Shown here in pieces: positions 6,314-18,576 of a DNA stretch of 64,000 nucleotides (within the stretch, counting starts at the first letter, position 1; the number at the start of each line of letters is the position of its first letter). The stretch spans positions 14,198,001 to 14,262,000 of the forward strand of contig CP075495.1 of NCBI GenBank assembly GCA_021613535.1, written 5' to 3'. The DNA comes from Adineta vaga. Lineage: Eukaryota > Animalia > Rotifera. The translations under genes and the position numbers were made by a program. The notes under the pieces are model-generated. The model did not search any database and was not told the origin of the DNA. It was given only the letters and a program-made list of their open reading frames with translations.

Positions 6314-9300
6314 TTAAATGACCGTATTTTCGACGGCATTCGCTGTTGCATCTTCTTGAAAATCTTCTTTCATAATATGTAACATTTGATGATCATCAAA
6401 GGAATCTTTTTCAGTAGCATTAAACGTACAAAATGAACATGTATAAATATCTTCAATGGTTTTCGGTAATGTATGATGAATTACATGTTGTTCAAATGAT
6501 GGACGATTATTAGTTGAATATGGACATGAGGAACAATAATATGTTGAAATATCCATTGTATGTGTAGTATTATTATTTGGATCATCTTCATGTTTACTAC
6601 CATTTTCGTGAACTATAGAATTTGCATAAAAAAGTGAATGAGAAGAATCTATAAGAATAACATACCTAACCACTTTTTCACAATAACAGTTGCATCATCG
6701 GATTTATTAATTATTAATGGTTCAAGAACGTTTGTCAACGATGCTAAACTACTACCATGTGTTGACATCATATGTTTTCGTATACTTGCACGCCATTTTG
6801 ATAAGAAAAAACATTGTGAACATTGAAAACCACCACCATCAGTTCCACAATGAATTTCGACATGACGATGAATATTTGATGGATTTGTACATTCATATGA
6901 ACAAGCAGAACATCCATACAAACGTTCTGGATGAGATGATTGTGATGAATTTGTTGATGTTGCTGGTGCAAATGATGGAGCATTATCAATATCTTTTAAT
7001 TTAGTATTGATTACATCAGATGACTAGAAATATGCGAAAACAAAAGCGTTGTGTACTTATCTGACAATGATATATATATATATTTTGTTTTTGAAAATAC
7101 CTGATGATATTGTTGATGATCATTTTCATTTGTTATTTTCATTTTGTTATTATTCGTAGTAAGAATTTGTTGTTCTTCCTGGTCATCTCTATTCGATAAC
7201 AATGATAGTTGGTTAGCAGCAGCAGCGGCCGTCGCTACTTCCAGACCAAGATCAATAACATGACCGGAATAATCACCTGGATGCATTCGTTTTAAATGCT
7301 TTTTAACATTGCCTTAAATTTAATAATGAATAAATTATTTTGATATATAAATTAAACTGAATGTTTATTACCTCCCCAAGCAGATACATGAGAACAAAGC
7401 GAACATTTATATCGTTTTACTAATGGTGCTTTTTCCGTTTGAAATTGTTGTTGTTGAAGTAGTTGTTTATTGGTTAATTGTCCAAGTAGAGTAGCAAGCG
7501 ATGCGGCAACATTATTGTTCATTAATGATGTTGGAAGATTTTCCAAGAAACTATTTGTCGTATTTGTTTTTCTTGTTGCCATGGCTGTATTGATCAATTG
7601 TTTAAGCATTTCTTCACTATTTGCATCATTTTGTTGATTTTCAGTTTCATCATAATCTTCATCGACATTTGAGGGTGTAGTTTCTGTCGTATTCGATGAG
7701 ACACTATTCGCAGGAAAATCTGATTCCATATCATCATTATCTTCAATAATCTAATTAAAAGCAATAAATATTGATATGCAAAGAAAAGAAGAGAGAGAGA
7801 GAGAGAGGTAAATGTTTTTACTTGATTATTAATATTATCGATAATTTTAGCATTTGATCCATCATTTTCATGCACATTTCGAATATGTCGAAGAATAACC
7901 CAAAGATTATAAGATTGGAGTGAACATGCTGAACATGAAAAAGCTTTCGGTATTGTTACAGTTGAATTATCTTGGTCAGATGATAAGGAAGCTTTTGTTG
8001 CTGTCATTGGTTCACCAGTGGTATTGGATGATGTCAATGGTTTATCCATTTCAAGTATAATATCAGACATTTGATCTGTATCAGATGGATGTTTAGCACG
8101 TATATGACGTTCGATTATCCATCGATGTGGTGCTAAACGTTCACAACGTATACATTTGTAGATACGAGATGATATTGGTCCAACACTAGATAATTGATGT
8201 TGAGTAGTTGTATTTTTTGTTGTTAAATGTTCAGAATCGATGATTGATAAGGAAGGTTCGTTTGGCGAGAGCAAATCTATTCAAACGAAAGATTTATTAG
8301 AAGCGTTATGTCTAAAAATGAATTTTGATTAGCAAACCTCTTGGTGTTGAATCACTATCTGTATTTAATGTTGATGATGTGTCAACAGTTAATGGTCGTT
8401 GTGATGGCATTGATATTTTTGGTCGTCGTATGATTGGACCATCTTCTTCATTATTACTTGCTTTTGTACTTTGAGTTCGTTTTCTTTTTGTACTAACAAC
8501 GGATTGTTGTTGAGTATCATTGGGATCAATTGGTAAAATATTTGATGGTAAATTCGCATGTTTCCATGTTTGATGTTTTTTCACATCACCTGAATTGGCT
8601 GAAGAAAATGTACAATAACCGCAACGAAATGCATGTGATGAATTTGGTTGCTGCTGTTGTTGTTGTTGTTGTTGCGGTTGAGGCAATGAGTGTCGAGATT
8701 GAGTAGGTGTTCCATTGGATGGTATTGATGCCAATGATGGTGTTAATGGACATGATAAGAGTTCTTTCAATTCATTAATTGTCATTGCATTTGGTTGAAA
8801 TTCACTGATATATTCACGTAAAGATTCAATATTATCTCCAATCATGCGATCCGAATGTTTTTTTCGAATATGAAATGAACCTAATATGGAAATGAATCGA
8901 ATACGAATAAGTTTCATTTCGTATGAATAAACTTACAATCGCCTCGATATCGATAAAGTCTATTACAAATTAGACAACGAAAATTTTTATCACTTAAATG
9001 ATTAGTAAGAACATGTTTACGAAATGCTTCCGAATCAACTGATGTAAATGAACAAAATGGACAATCAGTAAATTTCATTCCTGCTGTGTCAAAGTTCATC
9101 TTTGCATTTTGTTCAATTGTATTATTGATTGAATTTCCACGTGCTGATAGACGATTCGATTGTACTTTGGATTCATCTAGAAGATAGAAACGAAGGAAAA
9201 AATAAGCGTTCAATTGATCCAATCAGTCAATAAATACCATTGGACATCTGTTGCATTGGATGTTCGTCGGTTAAATGTTTTTTAACTTTGCCAGGATATT

Positions 9301-9734
9301 GACTCGCATAATCACAAAATGGACATTCAGTGATAACAAGTTGTTCACTATGTGCCATTTGACGATGGTTAAAATATGCTTTCACACTATGTGTCGAGAA
9401 TGGACATGATTTACATGAATATCGTCTATCATAACTTTTATTTGGCGATGAACGAACCGGCGAAGAATTTAGTGGTGAATGAGAAGTATTCAGCGGTGAA
9501 CGACTTTGTGATTGCTGAAGAACAAAAACAAATTGATTTCATGTAAAGATTAGAAGGAAAGATTAGATATACCGTTTGAGATTTAGCATAGAGTGGACTA
9601 TTTCGAATAGATTTATTTGCCTGTTGTTGTTGTTGTTTAGCTGGTGATTGAATAAGATTATTTTCATGATCTAAAAGTAATTTGGATGATTTAAGATTTG
9701 ACTTTTTTTCTTTATTCACCTTCAAGATGCTGTT
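6314..9734 (-). CDS. Multi-C2H2 zinc-finger transcription factor, at least 9 exons (9734-9573, 9514-9238, 9176-8937, 8880-8338, 8276-7822, 7750-7372, 7312-7101, 7023-6666, 6612-6314); first exon uncertain, candidate 10670-10638 (MSIYIGEKKRS)
   Basis: More than 10 CxxC...HxxxH fingers (e.g. FRCGYCTFSSANSGDVKKHQTWKH, YGCSACSYECTNPSNIHRHVEIH) separated by Q/S/T-rich linkers; GT-AG introns located at each junction, with frame verified at several. Confidence 0.85.
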
Positions 9735-13675: not shown

Positions 13676-16600
13676 TTAAGATTTATTGAAAGCTTCCGAT
13701 GGAATCATTTTCTAAATAGAAAAATAAATAAATATTTCACATTTGATCAATAACAAAAAGTCTTAGTTTACCTTTTGATGTGCATCTAGAAAATTTTCTG
13801 CTGCTTTATCATAATTCCAATTATTTTCTTGTAAACATCTGTAGAACAAAGTCAGAAGAGTCTTGAATTATGACTTGTCAAAGTAGAACTTACAATTTTG
13901 AATATGCTATATTCATTCCTGATTCTTGTGAAAATTTCAGTACCATTTGATTTTCAATATCGCCATTAGAATTGGTTGGTTGAGATGTAGTAGACACTGT
14001 TGATGTTGGTGTTGGACGAGTCATACTCTGAATAAAGAATAAAAGAATTTATTTTTGTTTTGGTATATAAGTCTGAACTTTCTACATACCGAAATTTGAG
14101 CATCAGTTGCATTTGTTATCATGATATGATCAGCAATAATCAATACACTATGAAAGAAATTTTTTTTCTGAAATTAAAAGTCATAAATAGAAAATTTGTA
14201 TGCTTACCCAGCAGTTGTTTGTGCACAAGTAAATGTACGTTGAAAACATCGTACAGGACTATTAGCATTTTGATCGACTAATAAATGACATAGTCATAAA
14301 TAAGATTTTTATTCGAAAACGACACTTACCTTCTCGATACAGGCCACTCACTGTAAAAATAGCTCGATTATTCTACAAAACAGATTGAATTGTATTGTAA
14401 AAAGTAGAAAGAAACATTTTCATAACTTACTGCTGTTGAAATAACATCAACATGAAATGAATTTCCATCATGTTTTGTTAGTGGAAATTTCGTTCTTAGA
14501 AATTCCAATATTGTCGATTTTCCATGTCGTAATAACATCATTCGTCGTTTATCATCAAAAACTTTTTGTAAATTTCTTGATTCACTGATAAATGTACCAA
14601 ATTTAAATTGTCGCGTAGGAACAATCGAACCATCCACTGATGAAATACATAATGAAAACATACATAAATCATGATAACAAGCTTGTAATTCTTCTCGTCC
14701 ACGTGTATCGAATAATCGATAGTATTCATCGATAAATTTAGCAAGAAATCCTTGCATATCATGTGGAACACAATGTGGTACTGATGCTGGCAAAGTTATT
14801 GTTTCAATATCAGTTGCAAAACGAATCGTTGGTGGTAGATCAACATTATCCTTGGTTAGAAAAAGAAAAGACAAAAACATGAAGAAATTGTTTGAAAAGT
14901 TCAATGTTTAACTTACAATCCGTTTGAGTTGTGGTAATTTCTGACGTATAGTACTAGAATGTGAGGAGATGGACCAATTGAATAGATGCTTATTGTACAA
15001 TACAACTGAAAAGATAGACACACAAACAACAGCAGCAACAAATGATCGTCTCGCTTGGAATGCGACACTTACACACGTCTAAATCGAATGTTTTCGATTC
15101 TGAAATCATTCCATTCTCAATCAATTCTTCCTCACTGTTAGAAGATACTAATGAATCTTATTTTTTTCCTCTATGGTTAATGAGATCGTCTGTTACATTT
15201 TACAATCATTCACTTTCTCTGATTACAAATACAAAAAACTTCTTTTCTTTTTTGAATTGTCCAAATATTGTTGCCATTTAAGTGGTTTATATGAAGGGTA
15301 TTATTTTTTGTAATCGGATGTCTTTAATTAATATATTTTTTGTCATCAAAATAAATCCTATTTAAAATAGGAATAAAACTGATTTCATATAATGAATCAG
15401 CTGATCAACAGATCAGAATTTGAATGATAAATTTCTTAGTTGTTGTAATATTTCGACATCCGTTTTTATTTAGAGTGAGTAGGAGATGAGGAAAATCACT
15501 CTATTTATTCGCCGTTGATTGATTGTGAAGAAAATTTTATCGACGTACAAAAAACTTCATAATAATTACAATAAAATCAAGAAATTTTTCATATAATTAT
15601 CTTTTTTTCTCTCACTCCCATGAATTTTTGTTGTACAACACACTCTCACTTGGAATGTAACTAGACGATCTCAGTTTTTCGTAGTTTCATTTTTTTTGTT
15701 TTCATCTAATTCAGTGAAGTTGAATGAAAAATAGAGAATAAAATTCACTGAAAACATTCGATTTACGAACATGTAGATATGTTTTGTCTTTGTCTGTTGT
15801 GAATGTCTGTGGAAAAAAAAGATTCTTTAGATCTGACCTTATAATATCGTCCATTGAAGAAGTATTGCGTTTGTTACTTGATAAAGTTAATGGATTGTTT
15901 TTAATAAATAGATGATCAAGATGAGGTAATTGTTTAAGATTATCAAAATCATCAACATTTTTTAACTAAAAAATAAATTAATTTGAATAACTTTTCATTT
16001 TATAAAAAAAATATATAACCAACTTGATTTGAAGCAATACTAAGAAGTACAAGATCATTCAAACGAAGATTACGAAATTCATGTAAATTGACGATATTAT
16101 TTGAACCCAAATCAAGTTGACGTGTCTATGGTGGAAATAATTAGATATTGAAGAACAAAAGAATTAGAAATACAAACCATATGAAGATCTTTATTAACGA
16201 TATCGACGACTTCACGTATGAATGCATGTTTATTGAATTGAGGAAATATTCCGAGAGAACTTAGTTCTAAAAAGAAAATTCATATCAAATATCGAGAAAC
16301 AAAGGAATGATAATGTTCAATTTCTGTTTTTTCAAAAATTGACAGTTCTTACCTTCATCATCTGCTAAATTTGTTAAATCTAATTTGAAAATTTGTTGAT
16401 CAAACCGACGATTAATTAGATAATCCTAAAGAAATAATAATTGTAAACATATAACTACGTATTTTATTTTCAATTATCTACTTTAAAATGTGGTCGTATA
16501 TCTTCATCTAATGATGGTATAGGTGCAGGTACTCGACTAATAAGAATACGAAGCTATAAAAACAAAAGATATTCAATATTTTCTTCATTATTTAATTCTA

Positions 16601-17185
16601 TCACTATTTACTATATCTAAACCTTGAACTTCAACTTTTCCATTAGCACGTTTAATCATATCTGCGTCTTGTTGACTATTGACAAAGAAAATTCCAGCTT
16701 TGTGTTTTGAATCAATATGATACTAAATCAATAAATAATCTATTGAAATATTTCAATTATTGAATGGAATCGTCTTTTACATGATAAGGTAGAAATTGTC
16801 GTGGACAATGAGCTCGAAGAGCAGTAATAACACGTTCCTTGCCAATATTTCCAGCATCTTGAATTGTAATACGCCACCAACCTGTTTGATTATGTTGCGG
16901 ATGTCTCAATTGAGGAGTTGAACGAACTGGACGTCGATTTCCATTAGGTTTGCCCATACGTCCTCGCGATGAAAAATCATGAAAAGAATTGCCAATGGGT
17001 GCTAAATGGTGACCCATTGATTTCATTAATGTATCAACATCATCTCCGCCTGTTGGACGACGATCTGATTCAGGACGATAATTTCTTGGACCATTACGTT
17101 GATGAAATTTTGAATTATATCGAGATGCTGTTGGATCTGTATGATTTCGATTACGATACGTTGAAAAATTATTACGATTTGACAT
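13676..17185 (-). CDS. NXF1: Nuclear RNA export factor 1 (TAP), multi-exon: RG-rich N-terminus, RRM-like, LRR, NTF2-like, UBA/TAP-C
   Basis: GWWRITI RRM start; LRR exon LKNVDDFDNLKQLPHLDHLFIKNNPL; NTF2-like FIDEYYRLFDTRGREELQACYHDLCMFS...LPLTKHD-like...RTFT...IISNDQL; C-terminal FSQESGMN...CLQENNWNYDKA...IPSEAF; stop TAA 13678-13676. Confidence 0.93.
14954..15837 (-). other. NXF1 cassette (putatively retained) intron, 884 nt, with nested long-range stems
   Basis: Lies between a 128-nt exon (15965-15838) and a 37-nt exon (14953-14917); perfect 16-bp inverted repeat 15750-15765/15080-15095 plus further nested stems. Confidence 0.85.
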
Positions 17186-17720: not shown

Positions 17721-18576
17721 ATGAAACGACAATTCAATTCGTCATCACCACCTTCGTCACCGTTTTCCAATTCACAAATTTCGGATGAACTTGAACCTGT
17801 ACCAAAACGACCTCGTATTTTTGTTTCTTCACCAACACCACCGCCAGATCCTATCGACGATGACAACGAAGAAGAAGAAGAAATTATTGTTGATGAACCT
17901 ATTATTCCGTCTGTAAATATTACCGAAGAGAAGTGAGAACATGTTCTATGAATAAAAAAACACACACAAGTTCTAAATTTTTTAATATTTCAGTTTAAAT
18001 GAAGAACAAGATGATGACAACGATATTATTGAAATTGAACAACAATATGATAATGGAGTTATTATTGTTTCGGATTCTGATACAGACGATGATCTAGGAA
18101 TTGATGTTACGGACGATATTATTCCATCGATATCTTCTTTAATTAATGAATCTATAGCGTCGCCTACTAGTACTGATGTTGAAATTGTTCATGAAGAAGT
18201 AGCTTTAATGGACGATGATGACGAAGAAGAACAGCAGCAGCAGCAAGAAATGGCTGATCAGGAATCTCTTGATATTATATCAGATGATAATGAGAATAAT
18301 GAATTAATCGATTTGACAGATGACGAACCACCTTCTATTATTTCTTCTTCCGTTTTACTTGAACGTAAATTATCAACTGATGTTCAACAATGTCCCATTT
18401 GTCTCGAAACACTATCACATTTACAACGCACAGGTATTTATTTAATAATCACTCCATGTCGTCATGTCATGTGTACATTATGCAGTCGGCAATTATTGGC
18501 AACTTCATCGCGATGTCCTCTATGTCGAGAAAATGTCACTTCAACAACATTATTGCCATACTGTATTCTTACCTGA
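17721..18576 (+). CDS. RNF4-like SUMO-targeted ubiquitin ligase; exons 17721-17932 and 17994-18576
   Basis: Several SIM-like motifs in acidic context (IIVDE, DIIEIE, VIIVSDSD, LDIISDD, ELIDLTDDE), NLS PKRPR, C-terminal C3HC4 RING CPIC...CRHVMCTLC...CPLC. Confidence 0.8.

What the first reader, a model, noticed from the sequence alone, without database searches (positions are those of the whole stretch)
14917..15965. NXF1 keeps the ancient retained cassette intron, about 15x longer than its neighbours
Seen: the other NXF1 introns inspected are short (tens of nt), but this one is 884 nt (15837-14954). It sits between a 128-nt exon ending ...MDDII-S (phase 2) and an exactly 37-nt exon (S-TIRQKLPQLKRI). 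Read-through adds 42 aa and stops at TGA 15713-15711, giving an RRM+LRR-only protein. Known: animal nxf1 genes share a 110-nt exon / retained intron / 37-nt exon block (human intron 10 with a CTE; Drosophila sbr cassette intron) that yields a short NXF1. 128 = 110 + 6 codons with the same phase. Inference: the autoregulatory intron-retention system survives in a genome of miniaturised introns. I know of no description in this lineage.
Basis: partly seen in the sequence, partly recalled or inferred. Interest (0 to 1): 0.85.

Follow-up and report, generated by a model that had tools for sequence, protein, structure and literature searches.

The report
Retained, structured NXF1 intron in rotifers
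The mRNA-export gene NXF1 of the rotifer Adineta vaga keeps one long intron, at the same spot as the self-regulated intron 10 of human NXF1; that intron stays unspliced in part of the RNA and folds into a conserved RNA rod unlike the vertebrate export element.

Summary
The NXF1 orthologue lies on the minus strand (CDS 17185-13676). It has 14 introns: 13 are 52-86 nt and intron 7 (15837-14954) is 884 nt. Intron 7 sits between a 128-nt exon and a 37-nt exon.

The position, the phase and the 37-nt exon match human intron 10. They also match the 110/37-nt block that I read directly in an annelid and an acanthocephalan.

The intron is single-copy DNA, so it is not a transposon. It is long (794-1149 nt) in all 11 bdelloid NXF1 genes examined (both ancient paralogues, three genera). 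The neighbouring introns stay near 55 nt and are unalignable.

cDNA-like contigs from four studies contain both the spliced junction and a contig running from exon 7 through the whole intron into exon 8. None of the other 13 introns is covered.

The intron has 147 columns invariant in the ten aligned copies. It also has nested long-range helices: 15 of 36 base pairs show compensatory double changes. The read-through peptide is not conserved, but an early stop is always present. The CTE hallmark AAGACA is not conserved, and no Rfam family matches.

Retention of the ancient intron is supported. Autoregulation by NXF1 remains an inference.

The parts
13676..17185 (-). NXF1 orthologue, coding part: 15 exons, RNA-supported model of 614 aa (RRM, LRR, NTF2-like, UBA/TAP-C)
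   Evidence: Exon model (all 14 joints seen in contigs). Pfam match. Database protein P0155. Alignment to human NXF1.
15838..15965 (-). Exon 7, 128 nt, last LRR repeat. It ends with two bases of a codon (phase 2) and is the counterpart of the 110-nt exon of other animals.
14954..15837 (-). Intron 7, 884 nt: the retained 'cassette' intron, orthologous in position to human NXF1 intron 10
   Evidence: Spliced joint and full-length intron-bearing contig 14926-15867. Single copy in the genome. Long in all bdelloid copies.
14917..14953 (-). Exon 8, the 37-nt micro-exon ((S)TIRQKLPQLKRI)
   Evidence: It is 37 nt in all 11 bdelloid genes, in Pomphorhynchus and in Owenia.
15830..15837 (-). 5' splice site GTCAGATC. 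It is invariant over 8 nt in 10/10 Adineta and Rotaria copies and has C at +3, where the other donors of this gene have A, T or (once) G.
   Evidence: The other donors of the gene are listed.
15711..15713 (-). In-frame TGA reached when the intron is read through. The predicted short product is 326 + 42 = 368 aa (N-terminus, RRM and LRR only).
15782..15809 (-). Outer helix H0, 5' arm (pairs with 15015-15043)
   Evidence: RNAduplex gives -22 to -27 kcal/mol in 9 of 10 copies. It is also present in the MFE fold.
15015..15043 (-). Outer helix H0, 3' arm
15752..15765 (-). Helix H1, 5' arm TAAATCGAATGTTT (14 bp; its partner lies about 660 nt downstream)
   Evidence: Perfect inverted repeat. RNAalifold and compensatory changes (UA/CG 5:4 and others).
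15080..15093 (-). Helix H1, 3' arm AAACATTCGATTTA
15664..15673 (-). Helix H2, 5' arm TGAGATCGTC
15181..15190 (-). Helix H2, 3' arm GACGATCTCA
15540..15554 (-). Nearly invariant motif TTTTTTGTACGTCGA (second copy). A weaker first copy lies at 15625-15638.
   Evidence: The motif is not enriched genome-wide.
15455..15461 (-). Helix H4, 5' arm GGATGTC
   Evidence: GC/AU 6:4 covariation.
15316..15322 (-). Helix H4, 3' arm GACATCC
14992..15012 (-). Conserved TTTTCAG followed by the 6-bp hairpin H5, about 45 nt upstream of the acceptor actually used. It is a possible decoy or cryptic acceptor.
   Evidence: The NCBI model P0155 uses it, but it is absent from the RNA joints.

Best explanation
Shown: This is the bdelloid-rotifer version of the ancient NXF1 'cassette' intron, the same intron as human NXF1 intron 10. 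Bdelloid introns have shrunk to about 55 nt, but this one has been held at roughly 0.8-1.1 kb in every NXF1 copy since before the old bdelloid gene duplication. It carries RNA-level information: a donor with an unusual C at +3, invariant over 8 nt; a nearly invariant 15-nt motif; and a set of nested, covarying long-range helices. The helices fold the intron into a rod and bring its two ends together. Part of the NXF1 RNA keeps this intron while all its other introns are removed. In every copy the retained form meets an early in-frame stop. [quoted passage not shown]

Inferred: The donor and the rod together set the balance between splicing and retention. The rod or the 15-nt motif is the handle by which a protein, most plausibly NXF1 itself, senses or exports the unspliced RNA. 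That would give feedback on NXF1 dosage and/or production of a short NXF1 cofactor, as in vertebrates. The cis element differs from the vertebrate/retroviral CTE.
For: Orthology of the position: same phase, and a 37-nt exon follows the intron here and in Owenia and Pomphorhynchus. The human intron-10 boundary falls at I338 (PMC5170612: 356 aa of which 18 are intronic). It aligns to the rotifer boundary.

Length conservation: intron 7 is 794-1149 nt in 11 of 11 bdelloid genes. Other introns are about 47-88 nt, with only sporadic lineage-specific long ones. The tree shows that the A/B duplication predates the Adineta/Rotaria split.

Not a repeat: the intron is single-copy in the genome.

Selection on RNA: intron 7 has 147 invariant columns, against 5-7 (only GT/AG) in introns 6 and 8. 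Only 3 of 20 fourfold sites in exon 9 are invariant.

Structure: RNAalifold predicts helices H1, H2, H4 and H5. 95% of cells are paired and 15 of 36 pairs show compensatory double changes. Slid controls give 31-45% paired and 1-4 compensatory pairs, and 0 of 1000 shuffles reach the observed values. An outer helix and long 5'/3' complementarity occur in 9-10 of 10 copies. The sense-strand MFE is a rod with z = -4.0.

Retention: a contig 14926-15867 is present in X2 and X13, a contig 14926-15787 in X14, and a partial contig 15249-15610 in X5. The spliced joint is present in all four runs. Cover is exactly zero on the other 13 introns; for example bin 16251-16381 reads 24.2, which equals 70.6 x 45/131. 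In X2 and X5 the junction depth plus the intron depth adds up to the exon depth.

Truncation: an in-frame stop lies 3-111 codons into the intron in all 11 copies.

Precedent: intron-10 retention with a short Nxf1 in mammals and zebrafish (PMC5170612, PMC4338338), and an intron-containing sbr transcript in Drosophila (PMC8151460, citing Ivankova 2010).
Against: No experiment or data here show that NXF1 protein binds this RNA, that the retained form leaves the nucleus, that it escapes NMD, or that the short protein exists.

All RNA evidence comes from assembled contigs of runs whose library type is not on record. Depth is one figure per contig. Strand, poly(A) status and cell compartment are unknown.

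No other long intron of this genome was available as a control. Slow splicing of any long intron could therefore give some retention.

The CTE hallmark AAGACA is present only in this copy and absent from the other nine, so a vertebrate-type NXF1 binding site is not conserved.

Helix H3 and the 15-nt motif show no covariation. The first motif copy is degraded in this very gene.

In D. carnosus the intron is long, but the internal blocks are not recognisable by the covariance model and its fold is inconclusive.
Confidence: 0.7

Rival explanations
1. Splicing aid only. The long-range helices are 'zipper' stems whose sole role is to shorten the effective distance between the 5' splice site and the branch point. 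This would let a spliceosome adapted to 55-nt introns remove a 0.9-kb intron. The observed retention would then be a passive by-product of slow splicing with no regulatory use.
For: H0 and H1 join a region 30-90 nt from the 5' splice site to a region 45-140 nt from the 3' splice site. That is the geometry expected of zipper stems described for long yeast introns (general knowledge, not checked in a paper here). The outgroup introns at this position are long as well but share no blocks.
Against: This reading does not explain why the intron has been kept long for so long. Deletion to about 55 nt would remove the problem, and every other intron of the gene underwent it. It also does not explain the invariant unpaired motifs (TTTTTTGTACGTCGA, GTCAGATC) or the conserved inner helices H2 and H4, which lie far from the splice sites. 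Retention looks substantial: junction depth is well below exon depth in X2 and X5.
Confidence: 0.15
2. The functional product is the excised intron itself: a stable, rod-shaped intronic RNA such as a sisRNA, a long hairpin that gives small RNAs, or another non-coding RNA. Most of the intron signal in the RNA data would then be this excised molecule plus a trace of pre-mRNA.
For: The fold is rod-like, with conserved helices and no conserved reading frame. The depth of the intron contig is an average dominated by the intron body, so junction-crossing reads could be few.
Against: In X2 the exon7-exon8 junction contig has depth 29 against 71-87 for the flanking exons, and in X5 it has 4.0 against 6.8-7.8. 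Many transcripts therefore lack the junction, as expected for true retention. No Rfam family (miRNA, snoRNA and others) matches in any of the 10 loci. The helices are short and interrupted, unlike the near-perfect duplexes of hairpin-RNA genes.
Confidence: 0.1
3. The intron is long for a trivial reason: a transposon or other neutral insertion, or a hidden exon or nested gene.
For: Sporadic long introns of 209-1278 nt do occur at other positions in single lineages of this gene family. The NCBI and D. carnosus gene models place extra coding sequence at the 3' end of the intron.
Against: The intron is single-copy in the genome. It is long in 11 of 11 genes at the same position, with alignable blocks and covariation. 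The longest open frames are 50-110 codons and none is conserved on either strand. The annotated alternative junction is not seen in RNA contigs.
Confidence: 0.03

Closest known systems
Vertebrate NXF1 (TAP) intron 10 with its constitutive transport element (human, mouse, zebrafish, coelacanth; PMC4338338, PMC5170612)
   Same: It is the same gene and the same intron position and phase, followed by the same 37-nt exon. The intron is retained in part of the mRNA. An early in-frame stop gives a short protein with N-terminus, RRM and LRR (human 338 + 18 aa; here 326 + 42 aa).
   Different: The vertebrate element is a compact stem-loop of about 50-100 nt with an AAGACA internal loop. Here AAGACA is not conserved. 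The conserved feature is a rod spanning the whole 0.8-1.1 kb intron, plus a different 15-nt motif. Export, translation and cofactor activity are shown in vertebrates and untested here. According to PMC4338338, BLAST found no CTE in birds, reptiles, fly or worm.
Drosophila sbr (Dm nxf1) intron-containing transcript (Ivankova et al. 2010, as cited in PMC8151460)
   Same: It is an invertebrate NXF1 orthologue with an abundant intron-retaining transcript. The responsible cis element is unknown.
   Different: Drosophila introns are not uniformly miniaturised, so the length contrast is less stark.
The 110-nt / 37-nt exon block of NXF1 in other protostomes (Owenia fusiformis, Pomphorhynchus laevis)
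   Same: The block is a 110-nt exon, a long intron (2323 and 1896 nt), a 37-nt exon and then a 125-nt exon, with the same phases. In Pomphorhynchus most other introns are 43-99 nt, as in bdelloids.
   Different: The upstream exon is 125/128 nt in Adineta and Rotaria and 113 nt in Didymodactylos. No shared intron sequence was detected with the covariance model. Retention in these species was not examined.
Zipper stems of long yeast introns, and detained or ultraconserved retained introns of SR-protein genes (PMC4281565, PMC5737842)
   Same: Long-range intramolecular pairing brings the ends of the intron together. The intron of an RNA-processing factor is highly conserved, retained in part of the transcripts, and brings in a premature stop.
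   Different: The genes and lineages differ. The SR-gene introns act through poison exons and NMD, and no poison exon was seen here.

Membership tests
Metazoan NXF1 retained ('cassette') intron | [quoted passage not shown] | tested here: met
   Pfam NXF_NTF2 at E 1e-20 on exon 9. P0155 carries all four domains. It aligns over 517 residues with human NXF1 at E 2e-62. Only two copies, the paralogue pair, exist in the genome.
Metazoan NXF1 retained ('cassette') intron | The intron lies between the end of the LRR and the NTF2-like domain, in phase 2, directly upstream of a 37-nt exon | tested here: met
   with the human boundary taken from PMC5170612.
Metazoan NXF1 retained ('cassette') intron | The upstream exon is 110 nt | tested here: not met
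   It is 128 nt here, 125/128 nt in Adineta and Rotaria, and 113 nt in Didymodactylos. It is 110 nt in Owenia and Pomphorhynchus. The difference is a multiple of three, so the phase is kept. I treat this as a lineage variant, not an exclusion.
Metazoan NXF1 retained ('cassette') intron | The intron is retained in a fraction of otherwise spliced transcripts | tested here: met
   Contig 14926-15867 occurs together with the spliced joint in runs of four studies, and cover on the other 13 introns is zero. Caveat: these are contigs only, and the library type is unknown.
Metazoan NXF1 retained ('cassette') intron | Read-through meets an early in-frame stop and gives a short NXF1 | tested here: met
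   The stop comes after 42 codons here and after 3-111 codons in the other 10 copies. Existence of the protein was not tested.
Constitutive transport element (MPMV / vertebrate NXF1 CTE) | Conserved AAGACA in an internal loop of a stem-loop (PMC4330393, PMC4174252) | tested here: not met
   AAGACA occurs twice in this copy and in none of the nine other aligned introns. One occurrence lies in the 5' arm of helix H0 and the other overlaps the 3' arm of helix H4.
Constitutive transport element (MPMV / vertebrate NXF1 CTE) | Sequence and structure homology to the vertebrate CTE core | not testable with these tools
   No CTE sequence or model was at hand. No Rfam family matched any of the loci.
Constitutive transport element (MPMV / vertebrate NXF1 CTE) | Direct binding by NXF1 RRM-LRR and NXF1/NXT-dependent export of unspliced RNA | not testable with these tools
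   This needs binding and reporter assays.
Zipper-stem type long-range intron helices | A conserved helix joins a region just downstream of the 5' splice site to a region just upstream of the branch point or 3' splice site | tested here: met
   H0 (15782-15809 with 15015-43) and H1 (15752-65 with 15080-93), with covariation support.
Zipper-stem type long-range intron helices | The helix raises splicing efficiency | not testable with these tools
   This needs minigene mutagenesis.

The most novel reading that the evidence does not exclude
Bdelloid NXF1 carries a previously undescribed class of export/feedback RNA element. It would be an intron-spanning, covarying rod of about 0.9 kb with an invariant UUUUUUGUACGUCGA motif, and it would replace the vertebrate CTE as the handle by which NXF1 recognises, exports or holds back its own unspliced mRNA. 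If so, NXF1 self-regulation through this one intron would be ancestral to bilaterians, while the RNA element was swapped during evolution.
Probability: 0.3. Interest if true: 0.8.

Novelty: new variant of a known kind. Interest (0 to 1): 0.66.

Why it matters
NXF1 is the general mRNA export receptor of animals. Its own intron-10 retention is the textbook cellular example of CTE-dependent export of an unspliced mRNA, but a CTE has been found only in mammals, fish and coelacanth.

Bdelloid rotifers act as a natural deletion experiment, because nearly every intron has been reduced to about 55 nt. One intron of this gene survived at about 0.9 kb in every copy. It carries covarying structure and is demonstrably retained. 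This argues that the retention system is functional, is far older than vertebrates, and can work with a non-CTE element.

The result gives a compact and highly constrained RNA, with defined helices and one 15-nt motif, on which to test how NXF1 transcripts are sensed. It also shows that two public gene models (A. vaga, D. carnosus) are mis-spliced at this intron.

Tried and rejected
1. Transposon or repeat origin. A DNA search of the whole genome found only the intron itself. Within the intron there are only short chance repeats besides the H1 arms.

2. Known RNA family. Rfam at a permissive E-value gave one chance hit on the window (Rhino_CRE, 23 bits against a threshold of 45). It gave nothing in 10 related loci.

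3. CTE hallmark. AAGACA is not conserved.

4. Conserved tail peptide or nested ORF. None was found.

5. Dispersed use of the TTTTGTACGTCGA motif. There are 10 genomic hits against 13 for the reversed control, and two of the 10 are the NXF1 introns.

6. Covariance model R1 of the motif/H3 domain. It found nothing significant in the D. carnosus, P. laevis and Owenia loci (best E 1.1). The search of the A. vaga genome with R1 failed twice on the server, so whether the domain occurs elsewhere in the genome is untested.

7. Rod-like pairing in outgroup introns. A crude duplex test gave z of -1.1, -3.1 and -0.2. The D. carnosus fold had no shuffle control. The result is inconclusive.

8. RNA editing in the rod. 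The differences between runs are mixed in type (2 of 12 are A>G in sense) and look like alleles.

9. Neoechinorhynchus agilis. Its NXF-like gene is intronless and therefore uninformative.

10. Monogonont rotifers (Brachionus). No sequence could be identified within the look-up caps.

11. The Russian-language and Gene papers on the nxf1 'cassette intron' are not in the library. I verified the 110/37 claim on genomes instead.

Exons were searched by reference one at a time, and database proteins (P0155 and others) stood in for the full-length product. The human comparison used PDB protein chains and papers only.
Full report
WHAT IS THERE

The window is C2:14198001-14262000 of a 100.8-Mb, six-contig genome. 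The database proteins of this gene and of its paralogue are named Adineta vaga I4U23_010183 and I4U23_023808, so the genome is that bdelloid rotifer.

On the minus strand lies a 15-exon gene. Exon 9 matches Pfam NXF_NTF2 at E 1e-20. The database product carries Tap-RNA_bind, LRR_NXF1-5, NXF_NTF2 and TAP_C and aligns over its whole length with human NXF1 (6e5u, E 2e-62).

I set the exon borders by eye and by script. All 14 junctions were then found as GT..AG joints in RNA-derived contigs. The exons are:
- e1 17185-16781
- e2 16722-16612
- e3 16553-16482
- e4 16425-16353
- e5 16266-16178
- e6 16125-16024
- e7 15965-15838 (128 nt)
- e8 14953-14917 (37 nt)
- e9 14850-14431
- e10 14372-14330
- e11 14277-14208
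- e12 14147-14090
- e13 14027-13894
- e14 13838-13772
- e15 13711-13676

Thirteen introns measure 52-86 nt. Intron 7 (15837-14954) measures 884 nt, about 15 times the median. Reading through it adds 42 codons and stops at TGA 15713-15711.

IS IT THE ANCIENT NXF1 INTRON?

The human short Nxf1 is 356 aa, of which the last 18 are encoded by intron 10 (PMC5170612). Exon 10 therefore ends at residue 338. In the alignment the chain ends at K619, so chain index + 111 gives the residue number. Residue 338 is then the I of STYI|SAIRERFPKLLRL|DGHELPPP. This lies exactly on the rotifer MDDII|STIRQKLPQLKRI|DNVDLPP. The position and phase are the same, and a 12⅓-codon (37-nt) exon follows.

I could not read the papers that describe the '110-nt exon / intron / 37-nt exon' block. 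I checked it on two genomes instead. Owenia fusiformis has exon 110, intron 2323, exon 37, intron 607 and exon 125. The acanthocephalan Pomphorhynchus laevis has exon 110, intron 1896, exon 37, intron 938 and exon 125. The rotifer exon is 128 nt, which is 110 + 18, so the phase is kept.

IS THE LENGTH AN ACCIDENT?

It is not. The intron DNA is single-copy in the genome.

The genome holds one paralogue on C5 (70% amino-acid identity in exon 9). It has exon 7 of 125 nt, an intron of 866 nt and exon 8 of 37 nt.

I fetched eight more bdelloid NXF1 genes and mapped each database protein onto its own locus. They come from Adineta ricciae, A. steineri, Rotaria sordida, R. socialis and R. magnacalcarata, and both paralogue lineages are represented. 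Intron 7 is 794-1149 nt in all of them. The other introns are 47-86 nt, with a few long ones that differ from lineage to lineage.

In Didymodactylos carnosus the true structure is exon 113 nt, intron 1038 nt and exon 37 nt.

A protein tree puts Adineta and Rotaria copies together inside lineage A (support 95/98), with the B copies of both genera outside. The duplication is therefore older than the split of the genera. The long intron has thus been kept in at least 11 genes over a span in which introns 6 and 8 have lost all alignable sequence (5-7 invariant columns, only GT and AG). Only 3 of 20 fourfold sites of exon 9 stay invariant.

WHAT IS IN THE INTRON?

The ten Adineta and Rotaria introns align with 147 invariant columns. 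The blocks conserved in at least 9 of 10 copies are:
- the donor GTCAGATC
- TAAATCGAA
- TTGTAC
- TTTTTTGTACGTCGA
- the acceptor context CATTCTAG

RNAalifold predicts nested long-range helices:
- H1: 14 bp, window 15752-65 with 15080-93, arms about 660 nt apart. This is the perfect 16-nt inverted repeat.
- H2: 15664-73 with 15181-90.
- H4: 15455-61 with 15316-22.
- H5: a small hairpin at 14992-15006, right after a conserved TTTTCAG.
- H3: formed by the two copies of the TTGTACGTCGAAAA motif.

Read sequence by sequence, H1, H2, H4 and H5 show many independent compensatory double changes. Examples are U-A versus C-G 5:4 in H1, A-U versus G-C 5:4 in H2, and G-C versus A-U 6:4 in H4. Overall 95% of cells are paired and 15 of 36 pairs carry a compensatory change. 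When the partner column is slid by 1-3 positions, 31-45% of cells pair and 1-4 pairs carry such a change. No shuffle out of 1000 reaches the observed values.

An outer helix H0 (15782-15809 with 15015-43) and long further 5'/3' complementarity are present in 9-10 of 10 copies. The sense-strand MFE of this copy is a single long rod (-194 kcal/mol, z -4.0). The antisense strand scores z -2.7. H3 contains two invariant G·U pairs, which would be lost on the other strand.

There is no conserved reading frame. The read-through tails are 3-111 aa and share only RSD(L/R). No Rfam family matches. AAGACA is named as the conserved loop motif of the retroviral and NXF1 CTEs (PMC4330393, PMC4174252). It occurs twice in this copy and in none of the other nine. 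The 13-nt core of the invariant motif is not spread over the genome (10 hits against 13 for a control).

IS THE INTRON RETAINED?

Only contigs of public runs were available, and their library type is not on record. Four runs from four studies are clearly cDNA, because their contigs skip all 14 introns at GT..AG.

All four have the exon7-exon8 joint. Two (X2, X13) have in addition a contig 14926-15867, which is the whole intron plus 28 and 30 nt of the flanking exons. X14 has 14926-15787 and X5 has 15249-15610.

The bin depths equal exon depth times the exonic fraction to three figures. For example, bin 16251-16381 in X2 reads 24.2, which is 70.6 x 45/131. The same holds for the bins around introns 1-3, 5, 6 and 8-14 that I checked. 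None of the other 13 introns therefore has any contig cover.

Intron 8 lies 37 nt from intron 7 and intron 6 lies 128 nt from it. Because neither shows any contig cover, the intron-7 signal is unlikely to come from genomic DNA or from an unspliced antisense RNA. The likeliest source is sense, otherwise spliced RNA, although contigs cannot show that a single molecule keeps intron 7 and lacks introns 6 and 8.

Depth is only one mean per contig, so the next point is indicative and not a measurement. In X2 the junction contig (29) plus the intron contig (47) add up to the exon depth (71-87). The same holds in X5 (4.0 + 3.2 against 6.8-7.8). In X13 the junction is at 173 and the intron at 42. This suggests roughly a fifth to three fifths unspliced, depending on the sample.

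HOW IT PROBABLY WORKS

Shown:
- It is a positionally orthologous intron.
- Its length is kept.
- Purifying selection acts on RNA sequence and on a covarying rod.
- The donor has an unusual C at +3 and is invariant.
- Retention is specific to this intron.
- An early stop is present in every copy.

Inferred: The donor and the rod set the ratio of spliced to unspliced RNA. A protein, most plausibly NXF1 itself as in vertebrates, reads the rod or the 15-nt motif to export or hold the unspliced RNA. This would give dosage feedback and/or a short RRM-LRR NXF1.

I give 0.7 to 'regulated retention of the ancient NXF1 intron with this RNA structure as its cis element'. Within that, I give about 0.3-0.4 to direct NXF1 feedback.

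The rivals are:
- The helices are only zipper stems that make a long intron spliceable, and retention is passive (0.15). This does not explain why the length is kept, nor the invariant unpaired motifs.
- The excised rod is itself the product (0.1). The junction depth below exon depth in X2 and X5 argues against it.
- A neutral insertion or a hidden exon (0.03). refute it.

COMPARISON AND NOVELTY

The closest system is vertebrate NXF1 intron 10 with its CTE (PMC4338338, PMC5170612). The gene, the intron, the retention and the truncated product are the same. The RNA element differs.

PMC4338338 reports that BLAST found no CTE in birds, reptiles, fly or worm. PMC8151460 states that it is unknown whether the fly intron-containing transcript is a target of the fly protein. 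I found no paper on rotifer NXF1.

I file the finding as a new variant of a known kind. Membership of the 'NXF1 retained intron' class is met on four of five features; the 110-nt exon is 128 nt here. Membership of the CTE family is not supported.

LIMITS AND PROCEDURE

No raw reads were available, so there is no information on strand, compartment or protein. There was no control long intron. The covariation rests on ten sequences from two paralogue lineages. The genome-wide search with the covariance model failed technically.

Exons were searched one by one by reference, and the joined model was never sent to a tool. No human DNA was fetched or compared.

Noticed in passing
window 14954-15965 versus protein P0155: The public A. 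vaga gene model (I4U23_010183, 618 aa) uses a donor inside exon 7 and the conserved upstream TTTTCAG as acceptor (…PLTLS|IVLYNKHLFNWSISSHSS-TIRQ…). RNA contigs of four runs show the 15838|14953 junction instead, which gives 614 aa. The model therefore looks mis-spliced at this intron.
   Followed up: yes
L013:1908-3095 and 8294-9654: The Didymodactylos carnosus model (P0174, 827 aa) also takes an upstream acceptor, giving an 82-nt exon instead of 37 nt. It is fused at its 3' end to a neighbouring MTRES1_C-domain gene across a 2688-nt 'intron'.
   Followed up: partly
L006:2078-2299: In the A. steineri lineage-A copy, the first about 222 nt of the annotated intron repeat the end of exon 7 and the start of the intron (with one N). 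This is either a local tandem duplication or an assembly artefact. Without it the intron would be about 927 nt.
   Followed up: no
L015:301-1929: The acanthocephalan Neoechinorhynchus agilis has an NXF-like gene (P0011, 542 aa) that is a single uninterrupted ORF. This suggests a retrocopy. TAP_C was not among its recorded domains.
   Followed up: no
L009 (R. sordida B), L010 (R. magnacalcarata B), L011 (A. steineri B): Intron 5 is long in three lineage-B genes (1278, 677 and 209 nt) but about 50 nt in the A. vaga and A. ricciae B copies and in lineage A. R. sordida B also has a 1074-nt intron 9, and R. sordida A a 919-nt intron 2. These sporadic expansions may be insertions and were not examined.
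   Followed up: no
window 17721-18576, plus strand: Upstream of NXF1 and diverging from it lies an acidic, serine-rich gene. It ends in a RING-type zinc-finger motif (CPICLE…CRHVMCTLC…CPLC, ORF 18208-18576). The shared intergenic region is about 0.5 kb.
   Followed up: no
window 14954-15837, runs X2, X13, X14, X5: The intron differs between runs at 12 positions and 3 small indels, whereas the flanking exons differ less. These look like allelic or strain variants rather than editing, since only 2 of 12 are A>G in sense.
   Followed up: partly
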